From Phyllobates terribilis (Eukaryota), in the NCBI RefSeq assembly GCF_046119375.1, contig NW_027362768.1, positions 377,022,001 to 377,086,000 of the forward strand: 64,000 nt of DNA, read 5' to 3'. Both the position numbers and the translations under genes were made by a program. Below are positions 32,405-55,800 of the stretch, piece by piece. Position 1 is the first letter of the stretch, and each line of letters begins with the position of its first letter. Below the pieces are notes generated by a model, which was not told the origin of the DNA, did no database searches, and saw only the letters and a list, made by a program, of their open reading frames with translations.

Positions 32405-35400
32405 TTATCTTGAGTTACATCCTGTATTATACTCCAGAGCTGCACTCACTATTCTGCTGATGCAGTCACTGTGTACATACATTACATTACTGATCCTGAG
32501 TTACATCCTGTATTATACTCCAGAGCTGCACTCACTATTCTGCTGGTGCAGTCACTGTGTACATACATTACATTACTGATCCTGAGTTACATCCTGTATT
32601 ATACTCCAGAGCTGCACTCACTATTCTGCTAGCGCAGTCACTGTGTACATACATTACATTACTGATCCTGAGTTACCTCCTGTATTATACTCCAGAGCTG
32701 CACTCACTATTCTGCTGGTGCAGTCACTGTGTATATACATTACATTACTGATCCTGAGTTACATCCTGTATTATCCTCCAGAGCTGCACTCACTATTCTG
32801 CTGGTGCAGTCACTGTGTATATACATTACATTACTGATCCTGAGTTACATCCTGTATTATCCTCCAGAGCTGCACTCACTATTCTGCTGGTGGAGTCACT
32901 GTGTACATACATTACATTACTGATCCTGAGTTACATCCTGTATTATACCCCAGAGCTGCACTCACTATTCTGCTGGTGCAGTCACCGTGTACATACATTA
33001 CTGATCCTGAGTTACATCCTGTATTATACTCTAGAGCTGCACTCACTATTCTGCTGGTGCAGTCACTGTGTATATACATTACATTACTGATCCTGAGTTA
33101 CCTCCTGTATTATACTCCAGAGCTGCACTCACTATTCTGCTGGTGCAGTCACTGTGTACATACATTACATTACTGATCCTGAGTTACCTCCTGTATTATA
33201 CTCCAGAGCTGCACTCACTATTCTGCTGGTGCAGTCACTGTGTATATACATTACATTACTGATCCTGAGTTACATCCTGTATTATCCTCCAGAGCTGCAC
33301 TCACTATTCTGCTGGTGGAGTCACTGTGTACATACATTACATTACTGATCCTGAGTTACATCCTGTATTATACCCCAGAGCTGCACTCACTATTCTGCTG
33401 GTGCAGTCACTGTGTACATACATTACATTACTGATCCTGAGTTACATCCTGTATTATACTCCAGAGCTGCACTCACTATTCTGCTGGTGCAGTCACTGTG
33501 TACATACATTACATTACTGATCCTGAGTTACCTCCTGTATTATACTCCAGAGCTGCACTCACTATTCTGCTGGTGCAGTCACTGTGTACATACATTACAT
33601 TACTGATCCTGAGTTACATCCTGTATTATTCTCCAGAGCTGCACTCACTATTCTGCTGGTGCAGTCACTGTGTACATACATTACATTACTGATCCTGAGT
33701 TGCATCCTGCAGTATCCTCCAGAGCTGCACTCACTATTCTGCTGGTGGAGTCACTGTGTACATACATTACATTACTGATCCTGAGTTACATCCTGTATTA
33801 TACCCCAGAGCTGCACTCACTATTCTGCTGGTGCAGTCACCGTGTACATACATTACATTACTGATCCTGAGTTACATCCTGTATTATACTCTAGAGCTGC
33901 ACTCACTATTCTGCTGGTGCAGTCACTGTGTACATACATTACATTACTGATCCTGAGTTACCTCCTGTATTATACTCCAGAGCTGCACTCACTATTCTGC
34001 TGATGCAGTCACTGTGTATATACATTACATTACTGATCCTGAGTTACATCCTGTATTATACTCCAGAGCTGCACTCACTATTCTGCTGGTGGAGTCACTG
34101 TGTACATACATTACATTACTGATCCTGAGTTACATCCTGTATTATACTCCAGAGCTGCACTCACTATTCTGCTGGTGGAGTCACTGTGTACATACATTAC
34201 ATTACTGATCCTGAGTTACATCCTGTATTATACTCCAGAGCTGCGCTCACTATTCTGCTGGTGCAGTCACTGTGTACATACATTACATTACTGATCCTGA
34301 GTTACCTCCTGTATTATACTCCAGAGCTGCACTCACTATTCTGCTGGTGCAGTCACTGTGTATATACATTACATTACTGATCCTAAGTTACATCCTGTAT
34401 TATCCTCCAGAGCTGCACTCACTATTCTGCTGGTGCAGTCACTGTGTACATACATTACATTACTGATCCTGAGTTGCATCCTGCAGTATCCTCCAGAGCT
34501 GCACTCACTATTCTGCTGGTGGAGTCACTGTGTACATACATTACATTACTGATCCTGAGTTACATCCTGTATTATACCCCAGAGCTGCACTCACTATTCT
34601 GCTGGTGCAGTCACCGTGTACATACATTACATTACTGATCCTGAGTTACATCCTGTATTATACTCTAGAGCTGCACTCACTATTCTGCTGGTGCAGTCAC
34701 TGTGTACATACATTACATTACTGATCCTGAGTTACATCCTGTATTATCCTCCAGAGCTGCACTCACTATTCTGCTGGTGGAGTCACTGTGTACATACATT
34801 ACATTATTGATCCTGAGTTACATCCTGTATTATACCCCAGAGCTGCACTCACTATTCTGCTGGTGCAGTCACTGTGTACATACATTACATTACTGATCCT
34901 GAGTTACATCCTGTATTATACTCCAGAGCTGCACTCACTATTCTGCTGGTGCAGTCACTGTGCACATACATTACATTACTGATCCTGAGTTACATCCTGT
35001 ATTATACTCCAGAGCTGCACTCACTATTCTGCTGGTGCAGTCACTGTGTACATACATTACATTACTGATCCTGAGTTACATCCTGTATTATACTCTAGAG
35101 CTGCACTCACTATTCTGCTGGTGCAGTCACTGTGTACATACATTACATTACATTACTGATCCTGAGTTACATCCTGTATTATACTCCAGAGCTGCACTCA
35201 CTATTCTCCTGGTGCAGTCACTGTGTATATACATTACATTACTGATCCTGAGTTACATCCTGTATTATCCTCCAGAGCTGCACTCACTATTCTGCTGGTG
35301 CAGTCACAGTGTACATACATTACATTACTGATCCTGAGTTACATCCTGTATTATACTCCAGAGCTGCACTCACTATTCTGCTGGTGCAGTCACTGTGTAC

Positions 35401-38400
35401 ATACATTACATTACTGATCCTGAGTTACATCCTGTATTATACCCCAGAGCTGCACTCACTATTCTGCTGGTGCAGTCACCGTGTACATACATTACATTAC
35501 TGATCCTGAGTTACATCCTGTATTATACTCTAGAGCTACACTCACTATTCTGCTGGTGCAGTCACTGTGTACATACATTACATTACTGATCCTGAGTTAC
35601 CTCCTGTATTATACTCCAGAGCTGCACTCACTATTCTGCTGGTGCAGTCACTGTGTATATACATTACATTACTGATCCTGAGTTACATCCTGTATTATCC
35701 TCCAGAGCTGCACTCACTATTCTGCTGGTGGAGTCACTGTGTACATACATTACATTACTGATCCTGAGTTACATCCTGTATTATACCCCAGAGCTGCACT
35801 CACTATTCTGCTGGTGCAGTCACTGTGCACATACATTACATTACTGATCCTGAGTTACATCCTGTATTATACTCCGGAGCTGCACTCACTATTCTGCTGG
35901 TGCAGTCACTGTGTACATACATTACATTACTGATCCTGAGTTACATCCTGTATTATACTCCAGAGCTGCACTCACTATTCTGCTGGTGCAGTCACTGTGT
36001 ATATACATTACATTACTGATCCTGAGTTACATCCTGTATTATCCTCCAGAGCTGCACTCACTATTCTGCTGGTGCAGTCACTGTGTACATACATTACATT
36101 ACTGATCCTGAGTTGCATCCTGCAGTATCCTCCAGAGCTGCACTCACTATTCTGCTGGTGGAGTCACTGTGTACATACATTACATTACTGATCCTGAGTT
36201 ACATCCTGTATTATACTCCAGAGCTGCACTCACTATTCTGCTGGTGCAGTCACTGTGTATATACATTACATTACTGATCCTGAGTTACATCCTGTATTAT
36301 CCTCCAGAGCTGCACTCACTATTCTGCTGGTGCAGTCACTGTGTACATACATTACATTACTGATCCTGAGTTGCATCCTGCAGTATCCTCCAGAGCTGCA
36401 CTCACTATTCTGCTGGTGGAGTCACTGTGTACATACATTACATTACTGATCCTGAGTTACATCCTGTATAATACCCCTGATCTGCACTCACTATTCTGCT
36501 GGTGCAGTCACCGTGTACATACATTACATTACTGATCCTGAGTTACATCCTGTATTATACTCTAGAGCTGCACTCACTATTCTGCTGGTGCAGTCACTGT
36601 GTACATACATTACATTACTGATCCTGAGTTACCTCCTGTATTATACTCCAGAGCTGCACTCACTATGCTGCTGGTGCAGTCACTGTGTATATACATTACA
36701 TTACTGATCCTGAGTTACATCCTGTATTATCCTCCAGAGCTGCACTCACTATTCTGCTGGTGGAGTCACTGTGTACATACATTACATTACTGATCCTGAG
36801 TTACATCCTGTATTATACTCCAGAGCTGCGCTCACTATTCTGCTGGTGCAGTCACTGTGTACATACATTACATTACTGATCCTGAGTTACCTCCTGTATT
36901 ATACTCCAGAGCTGCACTCACTATTCTGCTGGTGCAGTCACTGTGTATATACATTACATTACTGATCCTAAGTTACATCCTGTATTATCCTCCAGAGCTG
37001 CACTCACTATTCTGCTGGTGCAGTCACTGTGTACATACATTACATTACTGATCCTGAGTTGCATCCTGCAGTATCCTCCAGAGCTGCACTCACTATTCTG
37101 CTGGTGGAGTCACTGTGTACATACATTACATTACTGATCCTGAGTTACATCCTGTATTATACCCCAGAGCTGCACTCACTATTCTGCTGGTGCAGTCACC
37201 GTGTACATACATTACATTACTGATCCTGAGTTACATCCTGTATTATACTCTAGAGCTGCACTCACTATTCTGCTGGTGCAGTCACTGTGTACATACATTA
37301 CATTACATTACTGATCCTGAGTTACATCCTGTATTATCCTCCAGAGCTGCACTCACTATTCTGCTGGTGCAGTCACTGTGTACATACATTACATTACTGA
37401 TCCTGAGTTACCTCCTGTATTATACTCCAGAGCTGCACTCACTATTCTGCTGGTGCAGTCACTGTGTATATACATTACATTACTGATCCTGAGTTACATC
37501 CTGTATTATCCTCCAGAGCTGCACTCACTATTCTGCTGGTGCAGTCACTGTGTACATACATTACATTACTGATCCTGAGTTACATCCTGTATTATACTCT
37601 AGAGCTGCACTCACTATTCTGCTGGTGCAGTCACTGTGTACATACATTACATTACATTACTGATCCTGAGTTACATCCTGTATTATACTCCAGAGCTGCA
37701 CTCACTATTCTCCTGGTGCAGTCACTGTGTATATACATTACATTACTGATCCTGAGTTACATCCTGTATTATCCTCCAGAGCTGCACTCACTATTCTGCT
37801 GGTGCAGTCACAGTGTACATACATTACATTACTGATCCTGAGTTACATCCTGTATTATACTCCAGAGCTGCACTCACTATTCTGCTGGTGCAGTCACTGT
37901 GTACATACATTACATTACTGATCCTGAGTTACATCCTGTATTATACTCCAGAGCTGCACTCACTATTCTGCTGGTACAGTCACTGTGTACATACATTACA
38001 TTACTGATCCTGAGTTACATCCTGTATTATACTCCAGAGCTGCACTCACTATTCTGCTGGTGCAGTCACTGTGTACATACATTACATTACTGATCCTGAG
38101 TTACCTCCTGTATTATACTCCAGAGCTGCACTCACTATTCTGCTGGTGCAGTCACTGTGCACATACATTACATTACTGATCCTGAGTTACATCCTGTATT
38201 ATCCTCCAGAGCTGCACTCACTATTCTGCTGGTGCAGTCACTGTGTACATACATTACATTACTGATCCTGAATTGCATCCTGCAGTATCCTCCAGAGCTG
38301 CACTCACTATTCTGCTGGTGGAGTCACTGTGTATATACATTACATTACTGATCCTGAGTTACCTCCTGTATTATACTCCAGAGCTGCACTCACTATTCTG

Positions 38401-41400
38401 CTGGTGCAGTCACTGTGTACATACATTACATTACTGATCCTGAGTTACCTCCTGTATTATACTCCAGAGCTGCACTCACTATTCTGCTGGTGCAGTCACT
38501 GTGTATATACATTACATTACTGATCCTGAGTTACATCCTGTATTATCCTCCAGAGCTGCACTCACTATTCTGCTGGTGCAGTCACTGTGTACATACATTA
38601 CATTACTGATCCTGAGTTGCATCCTGCAGTATCCTCCAGAGCTGCACTCACTATTCTGCTGGTGGAGTCACTGTGTACATACATTACATTACTGATCCTG
38701 AGTTACATCCTGTATTATACCCCAGAGCTGCACTCACTATTCTGCTGGTGCAGTCACCGTGTACATACATTACATTACTGATCCTGAGTTACATCCTGTA
38801 TTATACTCTAGAGCTGCACTCACTATTCTGCTGGTGCAGTCACTGTGTACATACATTACATTACTGATCCTGAGTTACCTCCTGTATTATACTCCAGAGC
38901 TGCACTCACTATTCTGCTGGTGCAGTCACTGTGTATATACATTACATTACTGATCCTGAGTTACATCCTGTATTATCCTCCAGAGCTGCACTCACTATTC
39001 TGCTGGTGGAGTCACTGTGTACATACATTACATTACTGATCCTGAGTTACATCCTGTATTATACTCCAGAGCTGCGCTCACTATTCTGCTGGTGCAGTCA
39101 CTGTGTACATACATTACATTACTGATCCTGAGTTACCTCCTGTATTATACTCCAGAGCTGCACTCACTATTCTGCTGGTGCAGTCACTGTGTATATACAT
39201 TACATTACTGATCCTAAGTTACATCCTGTATTATCCTCCAGAGCTGCACTCACTATTCTGCTGGTGCAGTCACTGTGTACATACATTACATTACTGATCC
39301 TGAGTTGCATCCTGCAGTATCCTCCAGAGCTGCACTCACTATTCTGCTGGTGCAGTCACTGTGTACATACATTACATTACTGATCCTGAGTTACATCCTG
39401 TATTATACCCCAGAGCTGCACTCACTATTCTGCTGGTGCAGTCACTGTGTACATACATTACATTACTGATCCTGAGTTACATCCTGTATTATACTCCAGA
39501 GCTGCACTCACTATTCTGCTGGTGCAGTCACTGTGTACATACATTACATTACTGATCCTGAGTTACCTCCTGTATTATACTCCAGAGCTGCACTCACTAT
39601 TCTGCTGGTGCAGTCACTGTGTATATACATTACATTACTGATCCTGAGTTACATCCTGTATTATCCTCCAGAGCTGCACTCACTATTCTGCTTGTGCAGT
39701 CACTGTGTACATACATTACATTACTGATCCTGAGTTGCATCCTGCAGTATCCTCCAGAGCTGCACTCACTATTCTGCTGGTGGAGTCACTGTGTACATAC
39801 ATTACATTACTGATCCTGAGTTACATCCTGTATTATACTCCAGAGCTGCACCCACTATTCTGCTGGTGCAGTCACCGTGTACATACATTACATTACTGAT
39901 CCTGAGTTACATCCTGTATTATACTCTAGAGCTGCACTCACTATTCTGCTGGTGCAGTCACTGTGTACATACATTACATTACTGATCCTGAGTTACCTCC
40001 TGTATTATACTCCAGAGCTGCACTCACTATTCTGCTGGTGCAGTCACTGTGTATATACATTACATTACTGATCCTGAGTTACATCCTGTATTATCCTCCA
40101 GAGTTGCACTTACTATTCTGCTGGTGGAGTCACTGTGTACATACATTACATTACTGATCCTGAGTTACATCCTGTATTATACTCCAGAGCTGCGCTCACT
40201 ATTCTGCTGGTGCAGTCACTGTGTACATACATTACATTACTGATCCTGAGTTACATCCTGTATTATACTCCAGAGCTGCACTCACTATTCTGCTGGTGCA
40301 GTCACTGTGTATATACATTACATTACTGATCCTAAGTTACATCCTGTATTATCCTCCAGAGCTGCACTCACTATTCTGCTGGTGCAGTCACTGTGTACAT
40401 ACATTACATTACATTACTGATCCTGAGTTGCATCCTGCAGTATCCTCCAGAGCTGCACTCACTATTCTGCTGGTGGAGTCACTGTGTACATACATTACAT
40501 TACTGATCCTGAGTTACATCCTGTATTATACCCCAGAGCTGCACTCACTATTCTGCTGGTGCAGTCACCGTGTACATACATTACATTACTGATCCTGAGT
40601 TACATCCTGTATTATACTCTAGAGCTGCACTCACTATTCTGCTGGTGCAGTCACTGTGTACATACATTACATTACTGATCCTGAGTTACATCCTGTATTA
40701 TACTCCAGAGCTGCACTCACTATTCTGCTGGTGCAGTCACTGTGTACATACATTACATTACTGATCCTGAGTTACATCCTGTATTATACTCCAGAGCTGC
40801 ACTCACTATTCTGCTGGTGCAGTCACTGTGTACATACATTACATTACATTACTGATCCTGAGTTACATCCTGTATTATCCTCCAGAGCTGCACTCACTAT
40901 TCTGCTGGTGGAGTCACTGTGTACATACATTACATTACTGATCCTGAGTTACATCCTGTATTATACTCCAGAGCTGCACTCACTATTCAGCTGGTGCAGT
41001 CACTGTGTACATACATTACATTACTGATCCTGAGTTACATCCTGTATTATACTCCAGAGCTGCACTCACTATTCTGCTGGTGCAGTCACTGTGTACATAC
41101 ATTACATTACTGATCCTGAGTTACATCCTGTATTATACTCCAGAGCTGCACTCACTATTCAGCTGGTGCAGTCACTGTGTACATACATTACATTACTGAT
41201 CCTGAGTTACATCCTGTATTATACTCCAGAGCTGCACTCACTATTCTGCTGGTGCAGTCACTGTGTACATACATTACATTACATTACTGATCCTGAGTTA
41301 CATCCTGTATTATCCTCCAGAGCTGCACTCACTATTCTGCTGGTGGAGTCACTGTGTACATACATTACATTATTGATCCTGAGTTACATCCTGTATTATA

Positions 41401-44400
41401 CCCCAGAGCTGCACTCACTATTCTGCTGGTGCAGTCACTGTGTACATTACATTACATTACTGATCCTGAGTTACATCCTGTATTATACTCCAGAGCTGCA
41501 CTCACTATTCTGCTGGTGCAGTCACAGTGTACATACATTACATTACTGATCCTGAGTTACATCCTGTATTATACTCCAGAGCTGCACTCACTATTCTGCT
41601 GGTGGAGTCACTGTGTACATACATTACATTATTGATCCTGAGTTACATCCTGTATTATACCCCAGAGCTGCACTCACTATTCTGCTGGTGCAGTCACTGT
41701 GTACATACATTACATTACTGATCCTGAGTTACATCCTGTATTATACTCCAGAGCTGCACTCACTATTCTGCTGGTGCAGTCACTGTGCACATACATTACA
41801 TTACTGATCCTGAGTTACATCCTGTATTATACTCCAGAGCTGCACTCACTATTCTGCTGGTGCAGTCACTGTGTACATACATTACATTACTGATCCTGAG
41901 TTACATCCTGTATTATACTCTAGAGCTGCACTCACTATTCTGCTGGTGCAGTCACTGTGTACATACATTACATTACATTACTGATCCTGAGTTACATCCT
42001 GTATTATACTCCAGAGCTGCACTCACTATTCTCCTGGTGCAGTCACTGTGTATATACATTACATTACTGATCCTGAGTTACATCCTGTATTATCCTCCAG
42101 AGCTGCACTCACTATTCTGCTGGTGCAGTCACAGTGTACATACATTACATTACTGATCCTGAGTTACATCCTGTATTATACTCCAGAGCTGCACTCACTA
42201 TTCTGCTGGTGCAGTCACTGTGTACATACATTACATTACTGATCCTGAGTTACATCCTGTATTATACCCCAGAGCTGCACTCACTATTCTGCTGGTGCAG
42301 TCACCGTGTACATACATTACATTACTGATCCTGAGTTACATCCTGTATTATACTCTAGAGCTACACTCACTATTCTGCTGGTGCAGTCACTGTGTACATA
42401 CATTACATTACTGATCCTGAGTTACCTCCTGTATTATACTCCAGAGCTGCACTCACTATTCTGCTGGTGCAGTCACTGTGTATATACATTACATTACTGA
42501 TCCTGAGTTACATCCTGTATTATCCTCCAGAGCTGCACTCACTATTCTGCTGGTGGAGTCACTGTGTACATACATTACTTTACTGATCCTGAGTTACATC
42601 CTGTATTATACCCCAGAGCTGCACTCACTATTCTGCTGGTGCAGTCACTGTGCACATACATTACATTACTGATCCTGAGTTACATCCTGTATTATACTCC
42701 GGAGCTGCACTCACTATTCTGCTGGTGCAGTCACTGTGTACATACATTACATTACTGATCCTGAGTTACATCCTGTATTATACTCCAGAGCTGCACTCAC
42801 TATTCTGCTGGTGCAGTCACTGTGTATATACATTACATTACTGATCCTGAGTTACATCCTGTATTATCCTCCAGAGCTGCACTCACTATTCTGCTGGTGC
42901 AGTCACTGTGTACATACATTACATTACTGATCCTGAGTTGCATCCTGCAGTATCCTCCAGAGCTGCACTCACTATTCTGCTGGTGGAGTCACTGTGTACA
43001 TACATTACATTACTGATCCTGAGTTACATCCTGTATTATACTCCAGAGCTGCACTCACTATTCTGCTGGTGCAGTCACTGTGTATATACATTACATTACT
43101 GATCCTGAGTTACATCCTGTATTATCCTCCAGAGCTGCACTCACTATTCTGCTGGTGCAGTCACTGTGTACATACATTACATTACTGATCCTGAGTTGCA
43201 TCCTGCAGTATCCTCCAGAGCTGCACTCACTATTCTGCTGGTGGAGTCACTGTGTACATACATTACATTACTGATCCTGAGTTACATCCTGTATTATACT
43301 CTAGAGCTGCACTCACTATGCTGCTGGTGCAGTCACCGTGTACATACATTACATTACTGATCCTGAGTTACATCCTGTATTATACTCTAGAGCTGCACTC
43401 ACTATTCTGCTGGTGCAGTCACTGTGTACATACATTACATTACTGATCCTGAGTTACATCCTGTATTATACTCTAGAGCTGCACTCACTATTCTGCTGGT
43501 GCAGTCACCGTGTACATACATTACATTACTGATCCTGAGTTACATCCTGTATTATACTCTAGAGCTGCACTCACTATTCTGCTGGTGCAGTCACTGTGTA
43601 CATACATTACATTACTGATCCTGAGTTACCTCCTGTATTATACTCCAGAGCTGCACTCACTATGCTGCTGGTGCAGTCACTGTGTATATACATTACATTA
43701 CTGATCCTGAGTTACATCCTGTATTATCCTCCAGAGCTGCACTCACTATTCTGCTGGTGGAGTCACTGTGTACATACATTACATTACTGATCCTGAGTTA
43801 CATCCTGTATTATACTCCAGAGCTGCGCTCACTATTCTGCTGGTGCAGTCACTGTGTACATACATTACATTACTGATCCTGAGTTACCTCCTGTATTATA
43901 CTCCAGAGCTGCACTCACTATTCTGCTGGTGCAGTCACTGTGTATATACATTACATTACTGATCCTAAGTTACATCCTGTATTATCCTCCAGAGCTGCAC
44001 TCACTATTCTGCTGGTGCAGTCACTGTGTACATACATTACATTACTGATCCTGAGTTGCATCCTGCAGTATCCTCCAGAGCTGCACTCACTATTCTGCTG
44101 GTGGAGTCACTGTGTACATACATTACATTACTGATCCTGAGTTACATCCTGTATTATACCCCAGAGCTGCACTCACTATTCTGCTGGTGCAGTCACCGTG
44201 TACATACATTACATTACTGATCCTGAGTTACATCCTGTATTATACTCTAGAGCTGCACTCACTATTCTGCTGGTGCAGTCACTGTGTACATACATTACAT
44301 TACATTACTGATCCTGAGTTACATCCTGTATTATCCTCCAGAGCTGCACTCACTATTCTGCTGGTGCAGTCACTGTGTACATACATTACATTACTGATCC

Positions 44401-47400
44401 TGAGTTACCTCCTGTATTATACTCCAGAGCTGCACTCACTATTCTGCTGGTGCAGTCACTGTGTATATACATTACATTACTGATCCTGAGTTACATCCTG
44501 TATTATCCTCCAGAGCTGCACTCACTATTCTGCTGGTGCAGTCACTGTGTACATACATTACATTACTGATCCTGAGTTACATCCTGTATTATACTCTAGA
44601 GCTGCACTCACTATTCTGCTGGTGCAGTCACTGTGTACATACATTACATTACATTACTGATCCTGAGTTACATCCTGTATTATACTCCAGAGCTGCACTC
44701 ACTATTCTCCTGGTGCAGTCACTGTGTATATACATTACATTACTGATCCTGAGTTACATCCTGTATTATCCTCCAGAGCTGCACTCACTATTCTGCTGGT
44801 GCAGTCACAGTGTACATACATTACATTACTGATCCTGAGTTACATCCTGTATTATACTCCAGAGCTGCACTCACTATTCTGCTGGTGCAGTCACTGTGTA
44901 CATACATTACATTACTGATCCTGAGTTACATCCTGTATTATACTCCAGAGCTGCACTCACTATTCTGCTGGTACAGTCACTGTGTACATACATTACATTA
45001 CTGATCCTGAGTTACATCCTGTATTATATTCCAGAGCTGCACTCACTATTCTGCTGGTGCAGTCACTGTGTACATACATTACATTACTGATCCTGAGTTA
45101 CCTCCTGTATTATACTCCAGAGCTGCACTCACTATTCTGCTGGTGCAGTCACTGTGCACATACATTACATTACTGATCCTGAGTTACATCCTGTATTATC
45201 CTCCAGAGCTGCACTCACTATTCTGCTGGTGCAGTCACTGTGTACATACATTACATTACTGATCCTGAATTGCATCCTGCAGTATCCTCCAGAGCTGCAC
45301 TCACTATTCTGCTGGTGGAGTCACTGTGTATATACATTACATTACTGATCCTGAGTTACCTCCTGTATTATACTCCAGAGCTGCACTCACTATTCTGCTG
45401 GTGCAGTCACTGTGTACATACATTACATTACTGATCCTGAGTTACCTCCTGTATTATACTCCAGAGCTGCACTCACTATTCTGCTGGTGCAGTCACTGTG
45501 TATATACATTACATTACTGATCCTGAGTTACATCCTGTATTATCCTCCAGAGCTGCACTCACTATTCTGCTGGTGCAGTCACTGTGTACATACATTACAT
45601 TACTGATCCTGAGTTGCATCCTGCAGTATCCTCCAGAGCTGCACTCACTATTCTGCTGGTGGAGTCACTGTGTACATACATTACATTACTGATCCTGAGT
45701 TACATCCTGTATTATACCCCAGAGCTGCACTCACTATTCTGCTGGTGCAGTCACCGTGTACATACATTACATTACTGATCCTGAGTTACATCCTGTATTA
45801 TACTCTAGAGCTGCACTCACTATTCTGCTGGTGCAGTCACTGTGTACATACATTACATTACTGATCCTGAGTTACCTCCTGTATTATACTCCAGAGCTGC
45901 ACTCACTATTCTGCTGGTGCAGTCACTGTGTATATACATTACATTACTGATCCTGAGTTACATCCTGTATTATCCTCCAGAGCTGCACTCACTATTCTGC
46001 TGGTGGAGTCACTGTGTACATACATTACATTACTGATCCTGAGTTACATCCTGTATTATACTCCAGAGCTGCGCTCACTATTCTGCTGGTGCAGTCACTG
46101 TGTACATACATTACATTACTGATCCTGAGTTACCTCCTGTATTATACTCCAGAGCTGCACTCACTATTCTGCTGGTGCAGTCACTGTGTATATACATTAC
46201 ATTACTGATCCTAAGTTACATCCTGTATTATCCTCCAGAGCTGCACTCACTATTCTGCTGGTGCAGTCACTGTGTACATACATTACATTACTGATCCTGA
46301 GTTGCATCCTGCAGTATCCTCCAGAGCTGCACTCACTATTCTGCTGGTGCAGTCACTGTGTACATACATTACATTACTGATCCTGAGTTACATCCTGTAT
46401 TATACCCCAGAGCTGCACTCACTATTCTGCTGGTGCAGTCACTGTGTACATACATTACATTACTGATCCTGAGTTACATCCTGTATTATACTCCAGAGCT
46501 GCACTCACTATTCTGCTGGTGCAGTCACTGTGTACATACATTACATTACTGATCCTGAGTTACCTCCTGTATTATACTCCAGAGCTGCACTCACTATTCT
46601 GCTGGTGCAGTCACTGTGTATATACATTACATTACTGATCCTGAGTTACATCCTGTATTATCCTCCAGAGCTGCACTCACTATTCTGCTTGTGCAGTCAC
46701 TGTGTACATACATTACATTACTGATCCTGAGTTGCATCCTGCAGTATCCTCCAGAGCTGCACTCACTATTCTGCTGGTGGAGTCACTGTGTACATACATT
46801 ACATTACTGATCCTGAGTTACATCCTGTATTATACTCCAGAGCTGCACCCACTATTCTGCTGGTGCAGTCACCGTGTACATACATTACATTACTGATCCT
46901 GAGTTACATCCTGTATTATACTCTAGAGCTGCACTCACTATTCTGCTGGTGCAGTCACTGTGTACATACATTACATTACTGATCCTGAGTTACCTCCTGT
47001 ATTATACTCCAGAGCTGCACTCACTATTCTGCTGGTGCAGTCACTGTGTATATACATTACATTACTGATCCTGAGTTACATCCTGTATTATCCTCCAGAG
47101 CTGCACTTACTATTCTGCTGGTGGAGTCACTGTGTACATACATTACATTACTGATCCTGAGTTACATCCTGTATTATACTCCAGAGCTGCGCTCACTATT
47201 CTGCTGGTGCAGTCACTGTGTACATACATTACATTACTGATCCTGAGTTACATCCTGTATTATACTCCAGAGCTGCACTCACTATTCTGCTGGTGCAGTC
47301 ACTGTGTATATACATTACATTACTGATCCTAAGTTACATCCTGTATTATCCTCCAGAGCTGCACTCACTATTCTGCTGGTGCAGTCACTGTGTACATACA

Positions 47401-49365
47401 TTACATTACATTACTGATCCTGAGTTGCATCCTGCAGTATCCTCCAGAGCTGCACTCACTATTCTGCTGGTGGAGTCACTGTGTACATACATTACATTAC
47501 TGATCCTGAGTTACATCCTGTATTATACCCCAGAGCTGCACTCACTATTCTGCTGGTGCAGTCACCGTGTACATACATTACATTACTGATCCTGAGTTAC
47601 ATCCTGTATTATACTCTAGAGCTGCACTCACTATTCTGCTGGTGCAGTCACTGTGTACATACATTACATTACTGATCCTGAGTTACATCCTGTATTATAC
47701 TCCAGAGCTGCACTCACTATTCTGCTGGTGCAGTCACTGTGTACATACATTACATTACTGATCCTGAGTTACATCCTGTATTATACTCCAGAGCTGCACT
47801 CACTATTCTGCTGGTGCAGTCACTGTGTACATACATTACATTACATTACTGATCCTGAGTTACATCCTGTATTATCCTCCAGAGCTGCACTCACTATTCT
47901 GCTGGTGGAGTCACTGTGTACATACATTACATTACTGATCCTGAGTTACATCCTGTATTATACTCCAGAGCTGCACTCACTATTCAGCTGGTGCAGTCAC
48001 TGTGTACATACATTACATTACTGATCCTGAGTTACATCCTGTATTATACTCCAGAGCTGCACTCACTATTCTGCTGGTGCAGTCACTGTGTACATACATT
48101 ACATTACTGATCCTGAGTTACATCCTGTATTATCCTCCAGAGCTGCACTCACTATTCTGCTGGTGGAGTCACTGTGTACATACATTACATTATTGATCCT
48201 GAGTTACATCCTGTATTATACCCCAGAGCTGCACTCACTATTCTGCTGGTGCAGTCACTGTGTACATTACATTACATTACTGATCCTGAGTTACATCCTG
48301 TATTATACTCCAGAGCTGCACTCACTATTCTGCTGGTGCAGTCACAGTGTACATACATTACATTACTGATCCTGAGTTACATCCTGTATTATACTCCAGA
48401 GCTGCACTCACTATTCTGCTGGTGCAGTCACTGTGTACATACATTACATTACTGATCCTGAGTTACATCCTGTATTATACTCTAGAGCTGCACTCACTAT
48501 TCTCCTGGTGCAGTCACTGTGTATATACATTACATTACTGATCCTGAGTTACATCCTGTATTATCCTCCAGAGCTGCACTCACTATTCTGCTGGTGCAGT
48601 CACAGTGTACATACATTACATTACTGATCCTGAGTTACATCCTGTATTATACTCCAGAGCTGCACTCACTATTCTGCTGGTGCAGTCACTGTGTACATAC
48701 ATTACATTACTGATCCTGAGTTACATCCTGTATTATACTCTAGAGCTGCACTCACTATTCTGCTGGTGCAGTCACTGTGTACATACATTACATTACTGAT
48801 CCTGAGTTACATCCTGTATTATACTCCAGAGCTGCACTCACTATTCTGCTGGTGCAGTCACTGTGTACATACATTACATTACATTACTGATCCTGAGTTA
48901 CATCCTGTATTATCCTCCAGAGCTGCACTCACTATTCTGCTGGTGCAGTCACAGTGTACATACATTACATTACTGATCCTGAGTTACATCCTGTATTATC
49001 CTCCAGAGCTGCACTCACTATTCTGCTGGTGCAGTCACTGTGTACATACATTACATTACTGATCCTGAGTTACATCCTGTATTATACTCCAGAGCTGCAC
49101 TCACTATTCTGCTGGTGCAGTCACTGTGTACATACATTACATTACTGATCCTGAGTTACCTCCTGTATTATACTCCAGAGCTGCACTCACTATTCTGCTG
49201 GTGCAGTCACTGTGTACATACATTACATTACTGATCCTGAGTTACATCCTGTATTATACTCCAGAGCTGCACTCACTATTCTGCTGGTGCAGTCACTGTG
49301 TACATACATTACATTACTGATCCTGAGTTACCTCCGGTATTATACTCCAGAGCTGCACTCACTAC
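32405..49365. repeat. ~17-kb array of the 86-bp satellite (~197 copies) with higher-order structure, between SEC13 and GHRL
   Basis: Continuous 86-bp periodicity (ORF starts step by 86), with occasional 81/91-bp units from loss/gain of ACATT. Diagnostic variants recur at 6825- and 6997-bp offsets. Confidence 0.98.
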
Positions 49366-49715
49366 ATACATTACATATACATTGTTGCTGATATTTCCGG
49401 TACTCCGTTCCTCTTTCCAGCTGTCACATCTTTGCTCTCCGTCGTACAATCTCGCCTCCTCTGACTTATCCATTATTATATAGATGGAAATAACCGCGGA
49501 CAAACACGACATCAGAGCAATAAAAGAAATTCTTCCTGCTCCGTCCTGCGCTATCAGTCTCAGGTCCCCGGGGTCAGCACTGCGGCCGCGGTCACAATGG
49601 CTTCTCCCTACATTCCCTCGTTGTGTAGGTTCAGTCGCCGCTGTATCTCACGTCCTCGCAGATTTCCACCCCACCTGGTTCCTCGGGAGACGCTCCACAT
49701 TCCCTTGACCTTCCC

Positions 49716-49723
49716 TATAAATA
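49716..49723 (+). promoter_or_regulatory. TATA box of the ghrelin gene (TATAAATA)
   Basis: Canonical TATA ~150 bp upstream of the ghrelin ATG. A 3' splice site TTTTGCAG at 49831-49838 implies a short non-coding first exon, as in other vertebrate GHRL genes. Confidence 0.65.
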
Positions 49724-49868
49724 TGCTGCGGACTTGGGGGTGTGAAGACTTTCCTGTGAGGCTCCTTGTAGGTTTCTCCTCCAGGTTTTGGCCATTTTCG
49801 CTCCGGACTGAATTTAACGTATTTTTTCCATTTTGCAGATCTCCAGCGGGAAATCGGAATCAGGGAGG

Positions 49869-51775
49869 ATGCTGGGTAAAGCTTCGCTCTGCGCTGTCGT
49901 CATGTTTTGCCTTCTGTGGACGGAGGATGTGGACGGCGGATCGAGCTTCCTAAGCCCGGCAGATATGCAGAAAAACGCGGTAAGTGCAGAGCAGCGATCA
50001 CCAAACTGCAGCATTCTAGCAAACTGCAACTCCCAGCATCCTATGACTGTAGCCGTCAGGTGATGCAGAGTGGTGACGTTTTGCCACGTCTAGAAAGGCA
50101 CAACTTGGGGAAAGACATCAAAACAATTGTGCAATTTGACCATATGTGATACTCTATTCACCTCCAGAGCTGCATTCACACTTCTGCTAGTTTCCCCTTA
50201 GGTTTCAGCACATCATACTGTTGCATCCTGCTGGTTCAGCTTCTTCAGGCTGCATTTTCAGTTCATTATAGGAGTTCACAGTATAGATCTAAGATAGGTG
50301 ACAGTGAGCAGAATTGTGAGCACAGCTCTGGGAGTATTCTACTGAATTATGTATGTAGAAATTTTTTTACTTCTAAATTTTCTTCCAGGGTAAGAAGATA
50401 CCAAAAAAGCTGCATTACAACAATAATGGCCGCAGGGAGGCCGGAGACTCCGGGGAGGATGTCACAGACGATCACGCTGAAGATCAGGAAGAGATCGGGG
50501 TCTGTATATTGTGGGGTTCAGTGCAGGGAACGTTACGTGGGCCCCGGTGTAAGGTCACGTCTGTATGGTCCGGATTTGATGAGGATTTCGGTGCCGAGTT
50601 CTACGAGTGCTCCCCCGCTGGTTCCGTGCTCCCCCGCTGGTTCCGTGCTCCCCCGCTTGGTCCGTGCTCCCCGGCTGGGTCCGTGCTCCCCGGCTGGGTC
50701 CGTGCTCCCCCGCTTGGTCCGTGCTCCCCAGCTTGGTCCGTGCTCCCCCGCTGGGTCCGTGCTTAAGCCTGCACTTAGTTTTCTCTATTCCAGGTGATGA
50801 TCCCTCTGGATATTAATATGAAGATGACTCGGGAGCAAATCTGGAGGCAGAAAGGGGCCATAGAAAACCTCCTGCTCGGACTGTTCACTTTCGGCTCACC
50901 TGAAGGTACAGACCATTGTGTGACGCTATAACCTGGGGCTGAGGGTTCATTATCCAGCAAGTCACCCGGGTTATAGGAAAAAAAACAAATAGATCAGCGG
51001 CCACCAATGTAACCCCCTCCCCCACCACGCCAATATTTATACGGACAGACATGAGGCAATGGCGGAGTGAACGGACCCCTCATCTGGAGCTGCCAGAACC
51101 ACTGGACAAAGTGAAGAATTGCTGCATACAGTGCCTCTCCCTCCGGCAGCACATGGCCCCTAGATTATATGCCAATGTCTCTGATCATTAGCCTGTGAGC
51201 GATCGTCCAGTCTGATCCTGAGGTTAAAGGGATATTCCAGACTGTAAAACATGAAAGCGCACGATGCAACATTACAAAACTCACCGCAGTCCGCAGCCGA
51301 GCTACCACCTGCAGTCCGGCGTCACTTTGCTGCTCGGACATCGCTCACTAGGAGTCTATAGGGGAACTAACGTGAGCGGCTCCGCAGTGGGGGGAGCATA
51401 ATATGAAATGCACAAGAGGACGGAGACTATAGTAGGAGCTCAGCATGACTGTCAGTAGTGCATCATGGGAACTGTAGTCTGCTACCGAATTCAAAAAAGT
51501 GAAGCACATAGGGGGCAAAAGTGTGACCAAAAAGACCACTACACCTATACTATAATGAGCTTCTCATCTAAGCACTGGAGTGTCCCTCTAAGAGTCTGAA
51601 GTCGTTGTCGGAGGCCTCCTGTACTATGCTGCTGGTCGTGTGTGTGTGTGTATATATATATATATCATATAAAACAGATCCCACGCCCGAATGTACAATG
51701 TAACAACTCGTCATGTGATACAATGTTTTTTTACAAGTTTCCTCTCTTTATCTCACAGGTCCTCAGGAGGAGTAG
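49869..51775 (+). CDS. GHRL: Preproghrelin, 116 aa; coding exons 49869-49979, 50389-50499, 50794-50905, 51759-51775
   Basis: 23-aa signal peptide MLGKASLCAVVMFCLLWTEDVDG, then GSSFLSPADMQKNA|GKKIPKKLHYNNNGRR EAGDSGED...EEIG|VMIPLDINMKMTREQ...GSPE|GPQEE*. The GSSFLSP active core with acylatable Ser3, the position between SEC13 and TATDN2 (conserved synteny) and AATAAA at 51834-51839 all support the call. The short last exon is the least certain. Confidence 0.93.
50163..50333. mobile_element. Small element in a ghrelin intron with inverted ends homologous to the 86-bp satellite core
   Basis: TCCAGAGCTGCATTCACACTTCTGC (50163-50187) and GCAGAATTGTGAGCACAGCTCTGGGA (~50308-50333) are inverted copies of each other, and match the satellite segment CTCCAGAGCTGCACTCACTATTCTGC. 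Confidence 0.6.
50610..50765. repeat. 19-bp GC-rich minisatellite (CCCCCGCTGGTTCCGTGCT), ~8 copies, ghrelin intron
   Basis: Unit read directly. Source of the PLVPCSPAGSVLPR-type ORFs. Confidence 0.9.
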
Positions 51776-52059
51776 CCGTCCTCGCCCCCACAGCGCCCCC
51801 GTCCTGTCAATCACTGCAAGAACCTTTCAGTGAAATAAAATAGATGTTTACAAGCAATTTATCCGATTTGTGGTTATTTCTGACAGTCGTGTCCCAGCCT
51901 TTTATCAGGACACAATCCACTCCGCCGGTGAAGACACGTGTGACATCTACGGATTGCAGGTTCATTTTCTGTGTTGGTTGAATGGGCGAATGCGATGTCA
52001 CAGCTTAATGTTATATTCCAGTCCGACATCTCCCTCCACAGAGCGTGCAGTATCAGACA

Positions 52060-52460
52060 GAGGGAAGCTGCAGCTACAGCCCCCTCCTCTCCCCTCCCAG
52101 CATCTGCGTCACCCTCCCAGCATAAATCATAGAAAGCTGCAGCTACATCCCCCTCCTCTCCCCTCCCAGCATCTGCGTCACCCTCCCAGCATAAATCATA
52201 GAAAGCTGCAGCTACATCCCCCTCCTCTCCCCTCCCAGCATACATCATAGAAAGAAGCTCCATCTACGTCCCCCTCTTCTCCCCATCCCAGCATCTGCGT
52301 CCCCCTCCCAGCATAAATCATAGAAAGCTGCAGCTGCGCCCCCCTTCCTCTCCCCTCCCAGCATACCTGACCATAGAAAGAGGCTGCAGCTACGTCCCCA
52401 CTCCTTTTCCCTCTCACAGCTACTCTATGATAGAAAAATAACTGCAGCTGCATCCCCCTC
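52060..52460. repeat. ~69-bp tandem repeat (AGAAAGCTGCAGCTACATCCCCCTCCTCTCCCCTCCCAGCAT...), ~6 degenerate copies
   Basis: Visible 69-bp period (23-aa repeat in ORF 51870..52250). Lies between the convergent GHRL and TATDN2 3' ends. Confidence 0.85.
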
Positions 52461-52805: not shown

Positions 52806-55800
52806 TTATACATTATAGATCCGGTACGTGTTCTCCCGTAATTTTGACATGACGCTTTTGACGGGTAAGTTTCGTAGCCTGGCGATCTCGTGAACGGTGT
52901 GTATGGCGAGACCAGGGTGCGAAAATTTACAGACGTGTTTAGGCACCTAAAGAAAATAAAAAAAAAAAAAAGTGTCATTACCGACAGATACAACATATAC
53001 CAGTGAGAGATACAACACTGATAGCTGACGCCCCCTGCTGGTTCAGTGTCAGCACTGAGGATGCTCTGCTATAGTGCATAGTGGGGGGTAGCAGTGTTTA
53101 TTCCAAACAGATGTCACTCATTACCTGTTTAGGAACGAAATACGGGGCGTCCGTCTCCACAATCAGCCGGTCTAAGGGGATTTTCGTCACGGCATCTCGC
53201 GGTTGCACAGCAGATGGATACGTCAGGACAGCGGTGAAGCCCACCGCCATGTTCGGGAACTCCTTCAGAAATGGCTCGATGTCTGCGTAGCTGCCGGTGA
53301 AGCAGTGTCTGCGGTAGAAGGAGATGTTACTGAGGGTCCGGACCGCGCACGTGTACACGGAGATCGGACAGGGCACATAACTCACCGGTGTATCTTGTAG
53401 TCTCGAGGAAGCCATTTTTTCAATATTTTGAACAAGTCCTTGTCTGCACCCCGACAGTGAATGACCAGAGGCTTCCCCAGCGGCACCACCAGCTTCAGCT
53501 GCTTCTCGAAAACCTGCCCAGGAGGAAATCAAAGTAATGTTAATAGTGAACCTGATAAGAAAATGCACCGAAAATTGCAAACTAAATCCTCCGCAGATGT
53601 GCTGTAACTCGCAGCAACTTTTTTCAAGAATTCTGCTTACTGCTATTCAATAGAAACCTTTAATAATGTATAATACATGGGGAGGGGGGAGGTCACATAT
53701 CACTAATCGGGGCAGATCACAAAGACCTGTTTCTATGGTAACAGACTACAAAGGCCGTAGTCTGATCCCAGTTTGTACAGATCTGTCCCGATCACGTGGT
53801 GGACACCAGAGCACGGCCCATTACCGACAGTTATTGGCGCCATGTACCTGTGTGTTCCTATTAAATGACAGCAAGCAGAGATCTTTAAAAGCAGGAAGAA
53901 ATGAGAATCCATTAAACAATAATAATAAAAAAAAAAAAAAAAAAAAAAAGGGTCTACAGAAAGTAATTTTTCCTCACCGAGATCTGGTCTGCAATCTCCG
54001 TGGAACATTTATGGGAATAGTCCAGACCCATTTCTCCGAAGGCGATAGCTTTTGGGTGCCGCAGAGCCATCATCATGTCTTCATGCAGGTACTTATCGTA
54101 ATACTGAGCGAAGTGGGGGTGACAGCCAAATGCCCCCCACACCAAGTCCTCATTCAGCACCTGGTCCCATGGAAGCCTCTGCAGCGTGCGAGGATCGCAG
54201 TAATCGGTGATGCAGCCGTGAAATTCCCGGGGGAAGGTGGAGGTGAACTGCTCCCGGAGATCCGCGAAGGACGACCTGTGCGACAGTCTGGAGTAGAGCA
54301 TGTCCAGGTGGCAGTGGGTGTCTATGAAGCCGCCAGGCAGGAACTTGGAGTCCGAACTAGTAGAAGGAATCTCTAGCGTCCGTCTGCCGGATCTGGTGGG
54401 GTGACCGGATCTGGTGGTGTGGCCGGATATCCAGGTGTCGTCAGCAGACTCGTACCGCTCGCGGCTCCGTCCTACGGGGCTGACATTGTCGCTGGATTCG
54501 CTGAGGCGACTGCTGTCCAGCAGGGAAGGTTCGGACACGTAGCTGCTGTCCTGCTCCTTCTGCCGCCAGGCGCAGTGTTCTGCGGGAGGTTTGTAGAGGG
54601 GGATGATCGGCTCCGTGTAACGTCCCCACAGACTTTCAAACTGGCGAGTGGAAAGTTTAGTGTCGTCATTTATAGAACAGCAAGGCGGGAACTCGTCGTC
54701 CTGAGAAAATCTGGCTAGCGGGCCCACGTCTTCCACGTCGGAGAAGTCACTTCCGATAGAAGGGTCCTTTTCTGCTGCCTGCAAAAATATGTAATCGTTA
54801 GTGTCTGAGCTCAGAAATGGAAAGGTGTCTCCCTCACCAGCTGATTGTGGAGGTGCCGGGTGTCAGAGCCCACCGATCTAATACCGAAGACCTCTCCTAA
54901 GAGAAAGCCACCAAGATCACCATGCTGGACCCCTTTAAGGACTTACTGTTGTACTCACATCAATATCGGAGTCTCCATCTATGAACACAAGTCGGGGGTT
55001 TTCCTGCGGGACTGTGGCTTCCACTCTGGGAATCACATTGATGACCATTCGCCTCGGGCTGGGCGCTCTCTTTATGTCGTCGCTCCTTTGTTTCCGATCT
55101 CCCACAACTTCCTTCTTGGAGATGGTGGATTTTGGGGTTGAACGAGGCAGCGGTGACTCTTCTGGATCAGAGCGACTACTTCTTTCCACTGGTTTTCTTT
55201 CGTGGGCACTTCTGCTCTCGCTGTCCAGCGACCTGCGGGGTGTGCGGGGCGCCCCCAGGATGTCACTGAACGCCCTCTTGAATAGGAGAGAGGGCACCGT
55301 GACTTTCGAGCTTTGCAGTCTCTGCGCTTCACTACTCGATCTTCTATTAGGGTCAGTATTTCTCTGCTCCTGATGATCGCGCTGGAGAGAAAAATGTGGA
55401 ATATTAGTTGTTTGTGGGCACAAGAGAAAATTACCCCGATCGCAAAACAGAATAGAGGATAAATTGTAAAAATGGATGGAGGGCATATACAGATAAACAT
55501 CAGGATCGGGGGCTGGTACAAGTCTTGCACCGGAGCCCATCAGACTCTAGTTACGCCACTGCCGTGAATGCTGCACACATGCTCGCTATAGCCCCACTCA
55601 CAAAGGACTTTGGGATGCCAATGCTTGATATTGTGGGGGTCCTCATGACCAGACACAATATTGCTACTGAGGTACCTCTTTCTCCAGCGCCGCCTCTGAT
55701 GTCTCTGTGTGGGTGACAGCTCTGTGGGACTGCTCTCCATCCGTTCGTCTGCTTCGCGCTCTCACAGTGGAGCGGACTCCGGTGCCATTATCCAGCCGGC

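What the first reader, a model, noticed from the sequence alone, without database searches (positions are those of the whole stretch)
49938..50436. Ghrelin precursor carries fish-style amidation signals: G-RR after residue 27 and G-KK after residue 14
Seen: the spliced mature region reads GSSFLSPADMQKNA-GKK-IPKKLHYNNN-GRR (GGC CGC AGG at 50428-50436). Established: Gly followed by a dibasic site is the PC/CPE/PAM amidation signal. Teleost ghrelins are amidated through GRR (goldfish has two such sites, giving short and long forms), while bullfrog and most tetrapod ghrelins, as I recall them, are not amidated and bullfrog has Thr3. Inference: this frog may make an amidated 27-aa Ser3-acyl ghrelin, and possibly a 14-aa amidated mini-ghrelin, either retained from or convergent with fish.
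Basis: partly seen in the sequence, partly recalled or inferred. Interest (0 to 1): 0.7.

Follow-up and report, generated by a model that had tools for sequence, protein, structure and literature searches.

The report
Poison-frog ghrelin with amidation signal
This is the ordinary ghrelin (hunger hormone) gene of the golden poison frog, but poison frogs have changed residue 28 to glycine just before the cutting site, which should give a fish-style amidated hormone end not reported in any land vertebrate; the second "signal" (G-K-K) is shared by most frogs.

Summary
The window carries the GHRL gene of Phyllobates terribilis: four coding exons, 116 aa, with TATDN2 next to it. Exon 1 ends GSSFLSPADMQKNA. 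Exon 2 starts GKKIPKKLHYNNN-G-RR, with GGC CGC AGG at 50428-50436. A public gene model and more than 30 frog orthologues use the same splice junction.

- **Gly15-Lys-Lys is not special.** GKK or GKR is present in nearly all non-ranid frogs. Residues 15-28 are far better conserved than the spacer after RR, so the long peptide is the constrained product. A 14-residue amide is unlikely to be a main product.
- **Gly28-Arg-Arg is unusual.** Among 131 tetrapod and coelacanth precursors it occurs only in Dendrobatoidea (four genes, codons GGC, GGC, GGT and GGG) and in Eleutherodactylus coqui. Close outgroups have Asn (AAC). It is therefore derived and convergent with teleosts, not retained from them.

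Papers describe amidation as a teleost-specific feature. A 27-residue Ser3-acyl ghrelin amide is the likeliest product, but this is unproven. Goldfish, flounder and catfish show that the signal does not guarantee amidation. No RNA reads or peptide data could be obtained.

The parts
49716..49723 (+). TATA box (TATAAATA) of the GHRL promoter. A short non-coding first exon follows and ends at 49767, with donor GT at 49768-49769.
   Evidence: Read. CCTATAAAT and the following short exon with its donor are conserved in Dendrobates tinctorius and Anomaloglossus. The transcription start is inferred, not shown.
49839..49979 (+). First coding exon. The ATG is at 49869, the signal peptide at 49869-49937, and mature residues 1-14 (GSSFLSPADMQKNA) at 49938-49979. 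The donor gtaagt starts at 49980.
   Evidence: Same junction as public model P0001. The acceptor ttttgcag|ATCTCCAGC is conserved in four frogs.
50389..50499 (+). Exon 2. It encodes mature residues 15-27 (GKKIPKKLHYNNN, 50389-50427), Gly28, Arg-Arg, and the acidic spacer that ends ...EEIG.
   Evidence: The donor GT is at 50500-50501.
50389..50397 (+). Gly15-Lys16-Lys17 (GGT AAG AAG), an internal Gly-dibasic motif shared by most frogs.
   Evidence: GKK or GKR in 19 of the frog sequences, spanning several superfamilies.
50428..50436 (+). Gly28-Arg29-Arg30 (GGC CGC AGG). The RR processing site is invariant. It is preceded here by a derived Gly, which makes a candidate amidation signal.
   Evidence: RR is invariant. 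Gly occurs only in dendrobatoids and E. coqui. The codon is GGC, GGC, GGT and GGG in dendrobatoids versus AAC in Bufo and Leptodactylus.
50794..50905 (+). Exon 3, the C-terminal (obestatin or motilin-associated-like) part of the precursor: VMIPLDINMKMTREQIW...GSPE plus the first base of a split Gly codon.
   Evidence: Matches P0001.
51759..51839 (+). Exon 4: the last codons (G)PQEE, the stop codon TAG at 51773-51775, the 3' UTR, and AATAAA at 51834-51839.
   Evidence: The C-terminus is identical to P0001.
53098..54784 (-). Exons of the neighbouring TATDN2 gene (TatD DNase domain), arranged tail to tail with GHRL.
   Evidence: Pfam PF01026, E about 1e-13 for two ORFs. The same neighbour is present in Dendrobates and Bufo. 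GHRL-TATDN2 synteny is described in PMC4797157.

Best explanation
This is the single-copy-type ghrelin (GHRL, appetite-regulating hormone) gene of Phyllobates terribilis, intact and with the usual vertebrate layout.

Shown:
- The precursor has a signal peptide, then the GSSFLSP core with Ser3, then a 27-residue hormone sequence, then Gly28, then the Arg-Arg site that is invariant in amphibians.
- Gly28 is a derived substitution (Asn AAC to Gly GGN). It is shared by Dendrobatidae and Aromobatidae and arose again in Eleutherodactylus coqui.

Inferred:
- After signal-peptide removal and Ser3 acylation by GOAT, a prohormone convertase cuts after Arg-Arg. Purified 27- and 28-residue bullfrog ghrelin (recalled) implies this cut at the homologous site.
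- Carboxypeptidase E then removes the two Arg residues.
- The exposed Gly28 is used by peptidylglycine alpha-amidating monooxygenase. The product would be ghrelin(1-27) ending in Asn-NH2, probably mixed with some Gly-extended 28-mer.
- The amide would mainly protect the C-terminus, because receptor activation needs only the acylated N-terminal core.
- Gly15-Lys-Lys is an old frog-wide feature inside the mature hormone and is at most a minor cleavage site.
For: Gene identity:
- GSSFLSP follows directly after a signal peptide.
- The gene has four coding exons.
- It is 100% identical to the NCBI protein 'ghrelin-like [Phyllobates terribilis]'.
- BLASTP against bullfrog ghrelin gives 6e-28.
- TATDN2 is the neighbour, as in other vertebrates.

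Signal:
- Gly28 followed by RR is read directly.
- RR is invariant across 18 frog sequences.

Derived and kept:
- The state occurs in only 5 of 131 precursors.
- Four dendrobatoid genes, including two Anomaloglossus paralogues on different chromosomes, keep Gly with three different codons. The neighbouring residue 27 varies (N, M, M, L).
- The dendrobatoid clade has 100/100 support.

Long form is the functional product:
- Residues 15-28 show 0.60-0.90 pairwise identity, against 0.27-0.54 for the 14 residues after RR.

Precedent:
- Teleost ghrelins with Gly plus basic residues have been purified as amides (PMC3760443; PMC3133451).
Against:
- The signal does not guarantee amidation. Almost all native goldfish ghrelin was not amidated. 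The main barfin flounder form is a non-amidated 19-mer. Catfish makes both a Gly-extended and an amide form.
- Position 28 is the most variable site of the hormone's C-terminal half (N, H, S, R, Q, G). I recall that bullfrog also makes a 27-mer lacking residue 28. Gly could therefore be a nearly neutral change.
- Conservation of Gly rests on only four genes.
- Pfam's ghrelin models do not hit this protein. The same is true for most neobatrachian orthologues.
Confidence: 0.6

Rival explanations
1. Gly28 is a neutral substitution at a dispensable, variable last position. The secreted hormone would be a Gly-extended 28-mer or C-terminally trimmed free acids, as in catfish ghrelin-Gly, goldfish and flounder. 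No physiologically relevant amide would be made.
For: - Position 28 varies widely among amphibians (N, H, S, R, Q, G).
- Fish carrying the same signal often yield mainly non-amidated forms.
- Receptor activation needs only the acylated N-terminal pentapeptide (PMC12651995).
Against: - Gly is kept in all four dendrobatoid genes with three synonymous codons, while residue 27 changes.
- Gly followed by a cleaved dibasic site is the standard amidation substrate (established knowledge).
- Amidated forms are found in most teleosts with this signal.
Confidence: 0.3
2. Gly15-Lys-Lys is a working second processing site. The frog would then also secrete an acylated 14-residue amidated mini-ghrelin (...QKNA-NH2) as a significant product.
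For: - The Gly-Lys-Lys motif is really there.
- It is conserved in many frogs.
- Truncated 13-residue 'minighrelin' is active in mice (PMC4879156).
- Short ghrelin fragments containing the core activate the receptor.
Against: - Residues 15-28 are conserved like hormone sequence, not like spacer.
- The basic pair lies where other tetrapods have RK, KK or KR inside their ghrelin sequence. From recall, the peptides purified from chicken, turtle and mammals are full length.
- In many frogs and other tetrapods the pair is followed by Pro (KKP or KRP). Here it is followed by Ile-Pro.
- By my recollection of convertase-site statistics (Rholam and colleagues), Lys-Lys is the least used pair, and Pro or beta-branched residues after the pair disfavour cleavage.
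- The short goldfish amide predicted from cDNA is not among the purified native forms that the review names; the predominant form had 17 residues.
Confidence: 0.08
3. The motifs are artefacts of a wrong gene model. A different acceptor would be used, for example the in-frame AGs 6 or 9 bases downstream (after 50394 or 50397), which would delete Gly15-Lys or Gly15-Lys-Lys. Alternatively, the locus could be a pseudogene or an assembly error.
For: - Ghrelin genes are known for alternative acceptor use at this junction (des-Gln14; recalled).
- E. coqui isoform X2 has an 8-residue insertion exactly here.
- Exon-2-skipped models exist for Hyperolius (P0005).
- No reads could be laid.
Against: - The first AG follows a long pyrimidine tract and is conserved, together with the Gly codon, in six loci.
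- Orthologues, including records that carry no genome contig in the search table (Pelophylax and Glandirana; probably cDNA clones), show the same junction.
- The reading frame is open across all four exons.
- No alternative acceptor would touch Gly28.
- Gly28 is shared by three species, so it is not a sequencing error.
Confidence: 0.02

Closest known systems
Bullfrog (Aquarana/Rana catesbeiana) ghrelin, the purified amphibian reference (Kaiya et al. 2001, cited; sequence P0037)
   Same: - Same gene, exon layout and register.
- 28 positions between the signal peptide and an invariant Arg-Arg.
- ...FLSPADMQK.A core.
- BLASTP 6e-28 over the precursor.
   Different: - Bullfrog has Leu2-Thr3, with the acyl group on Thr.
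- It has ERQ instead of GKK at positions 15-17.
- It has Asn28 before RR, so no amidation signal.
Teleost amidated ghrelins (eel, trout, tilapia, barfin flounder)
   Same: Gly directly before a basic cleavage site at the hormone's C-terminus. In fish this has been shown by purification to give a C-terminal amide.
   Different: - Fish hormones are shorter (about 19-23 residues).
- The frog Gly is not inherited from the fish state. Coelacanth, caecilians, salamanders and most frogs lack it.
- The product in the frog is unverified.
Channel catfish ghrelin-Gly and ghrelin-amide, and native goldfish ghrelins
   Same: The precursor carries a Gly plus dibasic signal.
   Different: They show incomplete or absent amidation despite the signal. 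Catfish has a 23-residue Gly-extended form and a 22-residue amide. Goldfish ghrelin is mostly non-amidated, with a 17-residue main form. They are the model for the main rival explanation.
Ghrelins of other hyloid frogs (Bufo bufo, Leptodactylus fuscus, Engystomops, Hyla, Rhinoderma; database predictions)
   Same: GSSFLSPADMQKNA-GKK(I/V/L)PKKL.YNN... is nearly identical, including Gly15-Lys-Lys and RR.
   Different: Residue 28 is Asn, His or Ser rather than Gly. The codon is AAC in Bufo and Leptodactylus against GGC here.
Minighrelin from exon-2-deleted GHRL transcripts (PMC4879156)
   Same: A known route to a truncated ghrelin of about 13-14 residues that ends at the exon 1/2 boundary, the same boundary where the frog's Gly15 sits.
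   Different: It is made by exon skipping, not by cleavage and amidation at a Gly-Lys-Lys site. It is described in mammals. Exon-2-less gene models exist for Hyperolius, but nothing is shown for this frog.

Membership tests
Ghrelin / appetite-regulating hormone precursor (GHRL) | GSSFLSP-type active core with Ser or Thr at position 3, directly after the signal peptide | tested here: met
   MLGKASLCAVVMFCLLWTEDVDG|GSSFLSP.... F27, L28, S29 and P30 are invariant in the frog alignment.
Ghrelin / appetite-regulating hormone precursor (GHRL) | Significant full-length similarity to experimentally characterised ghrelin precursors | tested here: met
   BLASTP 6e-28 against bullfrog ghrelin. A profile of caecilian, coelacanth, bird and frog GHRL hits P0001 at 1e-29.
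Ghrelin / appetite-regulating hormone precursor (GHRL) | Gene structure: mature peptide split by a phase-0 intron after residue 13 or 14, four coding exons, and a short non-coding first exon | tested here: met
   The comparison with mammalian exon sizes is from recall and from PMC4879156.
Ghrelin / appetite-regulating hormone precursor (GHRL) | Conserved synteny with TATDN2 | tested here: met
   TatD_DNase exons lie on the minus strand at 53098-54784. The same neighbour is present in Dendrobates and Bufo. Synteny is described in PMC4797157.
Ghrelin / appetite-regulating hormone precursor (GHRL) | Match to Pfam Motilin_ghrelin (PF04644) or Motilin_assoc (PF04643) | tested here: not met
   No hit for the exon pieces at E up to 10, and none for the 116-aa precursor at E up to 0.01. 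Most neobatrachian orthologues also carry no precomputed Pfam hit, while Pelobates, caecilians and salamanders hit PF04643. I read this as a limit of model sensitivity for a short, fast-evolving precursor, not as evidence against orthology.
Ghrelin / appetite-regulating hormone precursor (GHRL) | O-acylation of residue 3 by GOAT, and GHS-R1a agonism | not testable with these tools
   Ser3 is present within the conserved GSSF context. The modification and the receptor activity need biochemistry.
C-terminally alpha-amidated peptide hormones (PAM substrates) | Gly immediately N-terminal to a basic convertase site at the end of the mature peptide | tested here: met
   NNN-G-RR-E, with GGC CGC AGG at 50428-50436.
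C-terminally alpha-amidated peptide hormones (PAM substrates) | The basic site is actually cleaved, and the Gly is converted to an amide in the producing cell | not testable with these tools
   Cleavage at the homologous RR is inferred from purified bullfrog ghrelin (recalled). Amidation is unverified, and fish counter-examples exist.
Teleost-type amidated ghrelin, as a state inherited by descent | The Gly before the C-terminal basic site is present continuously from fish through the stem of tetrapods and frogs | tested here: not met
   Absent in coelacanth, caecilians, salamanders, Ascaphus, Xenopus, pelobatoids, myobatrachoids, ranoids and the nearest hyloids. The resemblance to fish is convergent.

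The most novel reading that the evidence does not exclude
Poison frogs and their relatives (Dendrobatoidea), and independently the coqui, may have evolved a C-terminally amidated ghrelin. That would be the first in any tetrapod, and it would overturn the textbook statement that the amide is a teleost-only feature. The Gly would be held by selection, for example for a longer-lived hormone. Both Anomaloglossus paralogues keep it.
Probability: 0.45. Interest if true: 0.55.

Novelty: new variant of a known kind. Interest (0 to 1): 0.4.

Why it matters
Comparative endocrinology papers treat C-terminal amidation of ghrelin as a teleost-specific trait. [quoted passage not shown] A whole tetrapod clade whose precursor carries the amidation signal, plus one independent second case, offers a natural experiment. 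It could show what the amide does for this hormone (stability, clearance, receptor bias) and how easily such signals arise: two base changes in one codon. It is directly testable by mass spectrometry on captive-bred dendrobatids.

The likely physiological effect is modest, because the receptor reads the acylated N-terminus.

Tried and rejected
- **Pfam.** The three 37-aa exon pieces and the whole precursor gave no hit.
- **PDB sequence search.** Exon 1 gave no hit.
- **Paper searches for sequence strings.** GSSFLSPADM and GLTFLSPADM gave nothing.
- **Paper searches for dendrobatid ghrelin.** Nothing on its structure turned up.
- **Convertase flanking-residue rules.** The search found only a substrate-profiling paper that does not settle the question. 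Those rules are cited from memory and marked as such.
- **E. coqui locus.** It could not be fetched, so its Gly codon is unknown.
- **Earlier notes of this scan.** Nothing on this locus.
- **Bacterial-type promoter scan.** It is irrelevant for this eukaryotic gene.
- **Rejected reading: 'retained from fish'.** The outgroups lack Gly28.
- **Rejected reading: 'GKK is special to this frog'.** It is frog-wide.
- **Rejected reading: pseudogene or assembly error.** The frame is open, and the feature is shared by three species.
- **Joining exons.** For full-length searches I used the stored public protein P0001:68-183, which is the database's own spliced model.
- **Use of the large representative search.** I used it because 37-aa exon pieces fall outside the length window of the word search and the family scan was blank.

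Full report
**What is there**

The stretch 49700-51900 of the window holds a complete ghrelin gene on the + strand.
- Reading and translating by reference gives coding exon 1 with the ATG at 49869. It encodes the signal peptide MLGKASLCAVVMFCLLWTEDVDG and mature residues 1-14, GSSFLSPADMQKNA. The donor gtaagt is at 49980.
- Exon 2 (50389-50499) follows a long pyrimidine tract and cag. It reads GKKIPKKLHYNNNGRREAGDSGEDVTDDHAEDQEEIG.
- Exon 3 is 50794-50905.
- Exon 4 starts at 51759, with the stop at 51773-51775 and AATAAA at 51834-51839.
- The product has 116 residues.
- GGT AAG AAG is at 50389-50397 and GGC CGC AGG at 50428-50436.

**How I searched**

- Pfam and PDB were blank on the 37-residue pieces.
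- The word search cannot reach full-length relatives from such short pieces. I therefore used the one exhaustive search with exon 1.
- That search returned P0001, a 183-residue public protein that is 100% identical. A later search names it 'ghrelin-like [Phyllobates terribilis]'.
- Residues 68-183 of P0001 are exactly my four-exon model. I used that stored protein as the reference for the spliced precursor from then on.
- The window therefore comes from the golden poison frog (Dendrobatidae).

**Annotation artefact in P0001**

The extra 67 N-terminal residues of P0001 run through a TATAAATA box at 49716-49723. This box is conserved, together with a short non-coding exon and its donor, in Dendrobates and Anomaloglossus. 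I read the extension as an annotation artefact. Orthologues start at M(M)LGK.

**Identity of the gene**

- BLASTP against bullfrog ghrelin gives 6e-28.
- A profile of distant tetrapod GHRL proteins hits P0001 at 1e-29.
- TATDN2 exons lie tail to tail downstream (Pfam PF01026), as in Dendrobates and Bufo and as published for vertebrates (PMC4797157).
- Pfam's ghrelin models do not hit the protein. They also miss most neobatrachian orthologues, so this is a sensitivity limit.

**Is the splice junction right?**

Three lines of comparative evidence support the junction:
- The public model uses it.
- Ala14 and Gly15 are nearly invariant across frog precursors.
- The acceptor, followed by a Gly codon, is conserved in Dendrobates, both Anomaloglossus genes, Bufo and Leptodactylus.

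Two in-frame AGs lie 6 and 9 bases further on and could give minor isoforms lacking Gly15. This is untested. Neither would affect Gly28.

**Gly15-Lys-Lys**

- Over 30 anuran precursors show GKK in all Hyloidea and Myobatrachoidea sampled and in Hyperolius.
- GKR is found in Spea, Pelobates, Leptobrachium and Rhinophrynus.
- Some ranoids have GRQ. Ascaphus has QKR, Xenopus VKR and caecilians SKK.
- The motif is therefore old and common in frogs, not a trait of this species. It is the frog version of the basic pair that all tetrapod ghrelins carry just after the exon junction.
- Pairwise identity is 0.85-0.93 for residues 1-14 and 0.60-0.90 for residues 15-28. It is only 0.27-0.54 for the 14 residues after RR.
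- The second half therefore evolves like hormone, not like a discarded spacer.
- From memory, not tested here: Lys-Lys is the least used convertase pair, and Pro or beta-branched residues after it disfavour cleavage. Here Ile-Pro follows. Many frogs and other tetrapods have Pro directly after the pair.
- A 14-residue amide is therefore at best a minor product.

**Gly28-Arg-Arg**

- RR is invariant.
- Gly before it is found only in Phyllobates (NNNGRR), Dendrobates tinctorius (NNMGRR), two Anomaloglossus baeobatrachus genes on different chromosomes (NNMGRR and NNLGRR) and Eleutherodactylus coqui (DNPGRR).
- All other frogs, salamanders, caecilians, the coelacanth, birds, turtles, crocodilians and lepidosaurs in a set of 131 precursors lack it.
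- At the DNA level the codon is GGC, GGC, GGT and GGG in the four dendrobatoid genes and AAC in Bufo and Leptodactylus. That is two base changes, followed by synonymous drift while Gly was kept and residue 27 varied.
- A gene tree gives the dendrobatoid clade 100/100 support and leaves E. coqui in an unresolved hyloid polytomy.
- The maximum-likelihood tree needs two changes. A single origin is not excluded by the well-supported branches. The accepted placement of Terrarana away from Dendrobatoidea (recalled) makes two origins more likely.
- Either way the state is derived within Hyloidea, so it is convergent with teleosts, not retained.

**Mechanism**

- Shown: the sequence signal and its distribution.
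- Inferred from established peptide-hormone processing: cleavage after RR by a prohormone convertase, removal of the Arg residues by carboxypeptidase E, and conversion of the exposed Gly by PAM. The product would be GSS(acyl)FLSPADMQKNAGKKIPKKLHYNNN-NH2.
- An Asn-amide end has precedent (VIP, recalled).

Papers state that the amide is specific to teleost ghrelin and lacking in tetrapods (PMC2803784; PMC3759782). A tetrapod clade carrying the signal therefore departs from the accepted picture.

**Cautions**

- Goldfish ghrelin is mostly not amidated despite the signal, and the predominant native form has 17 residues (PMC3133451).
- The main flounder form is a non-amidated 19-mer, with the 20-residue amide less abundant (PMC3760443).
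- Catfish makes both Gly-extended and amide forms (PMC3713435).
- Position 28 is also the most variable residue of the hormone's C-terminal half.

I put about 0.6 on a substantial amidated 27-mer, 0.3 on a neutral change without a relevant amide, and under 0.1 on a significant 14-residue amide.

**Verdict**

The gene is an ordinary orthologue with one clade-specific feature, which makes it a new variant of a known kind. Interest is moderate: it contradicts a textbook generalisation and is easy to test, but it is a sequence-only prediction with probably modest physiological weight.

Noticed in passing
window 32403-49364: A 17-kb satellite of about 197 copies of an 86-bp unit (95% matches) ends roughly 350 bp upstream of the GHRL TATA box. 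The same 86-bp repeat, 91-95% identical, also fills the region upstream of GHRL in Dendrobates tinctorius (L001:1-2116). It was not seen in the 3-kb flanks of the Anomaloglossus, Bufo or Leptodactylus loci. The array therefore appears to hold a conserved position next to the promoter in two dendrobatid genera. A related fragment (ctccagagctgca.tcac) lies in GHRL intron 1 near 50163-50200.
   Followed up: partly
window 49869 upstream; protein P0001 residues 1-67: The public gene model 'ghrelin-like [Phyllobates terribilis]' carries a 67-residue N-terminal extension. It reads through the conserved TATA box (49716-49723) and the short non-coding exon. Orthologues start at M(M)LGK. This is probably an annotation artefact.
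   Followed up: partly
L002 (CM109169.1) and L003 (CM109163.1), Anomaloglossus baeobatrachus: This aromobatid frog has two intron-containing ghrelin genes on different chromosomes of the same assembly. They clearly differ in sequence and both keep Gly28-RR. In the gene tree they do not pair with each other (a polytomy with Phyllobates and Dendrobates), so the duplication may be old. Whether P. terribilis has a second copy is unknown.
   Followed up: partly
window 50607-50763 (GHRL intron 2): A 19-bp minisatellite (GTGCTCCCCCGCTGGGTCC, 8.3 copies) lies inside intron 2. Further 69-bp and 122-bp tandem repeats lie just after the gene at 52065-52413.
   Followed up: no
window 10722-12278, minus strand: A long open exon (518 aa) encodes CAND1-like TPR/HEAT repeats (PF25782, E 2.5e-50). 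A CAND1 or CAND2-type gene therefore lies upstream of GHRL, where SEC13 is the published neighbour in mammals and the coelacanth. I did not look for SEC13 in the window.
   Followed up: no
proteins P0022 (Eleutherodactylus coqui X2), P0005 and P0041 (Hyperolius riggenbachi): Gene models of other frogs vary at the exon 1/2 junction. E. coqui has an 8-residue insertion (MRGHAAEQ) between Ala14 and Gly15. Hyperolius has an exon-2-less precursor (GSSFLSPADMQKNA joined directly to VTIPMD...) from a second locus. This recalls mammalian des-Gln14 and 'minighrelin' variants.
   Followed up: no
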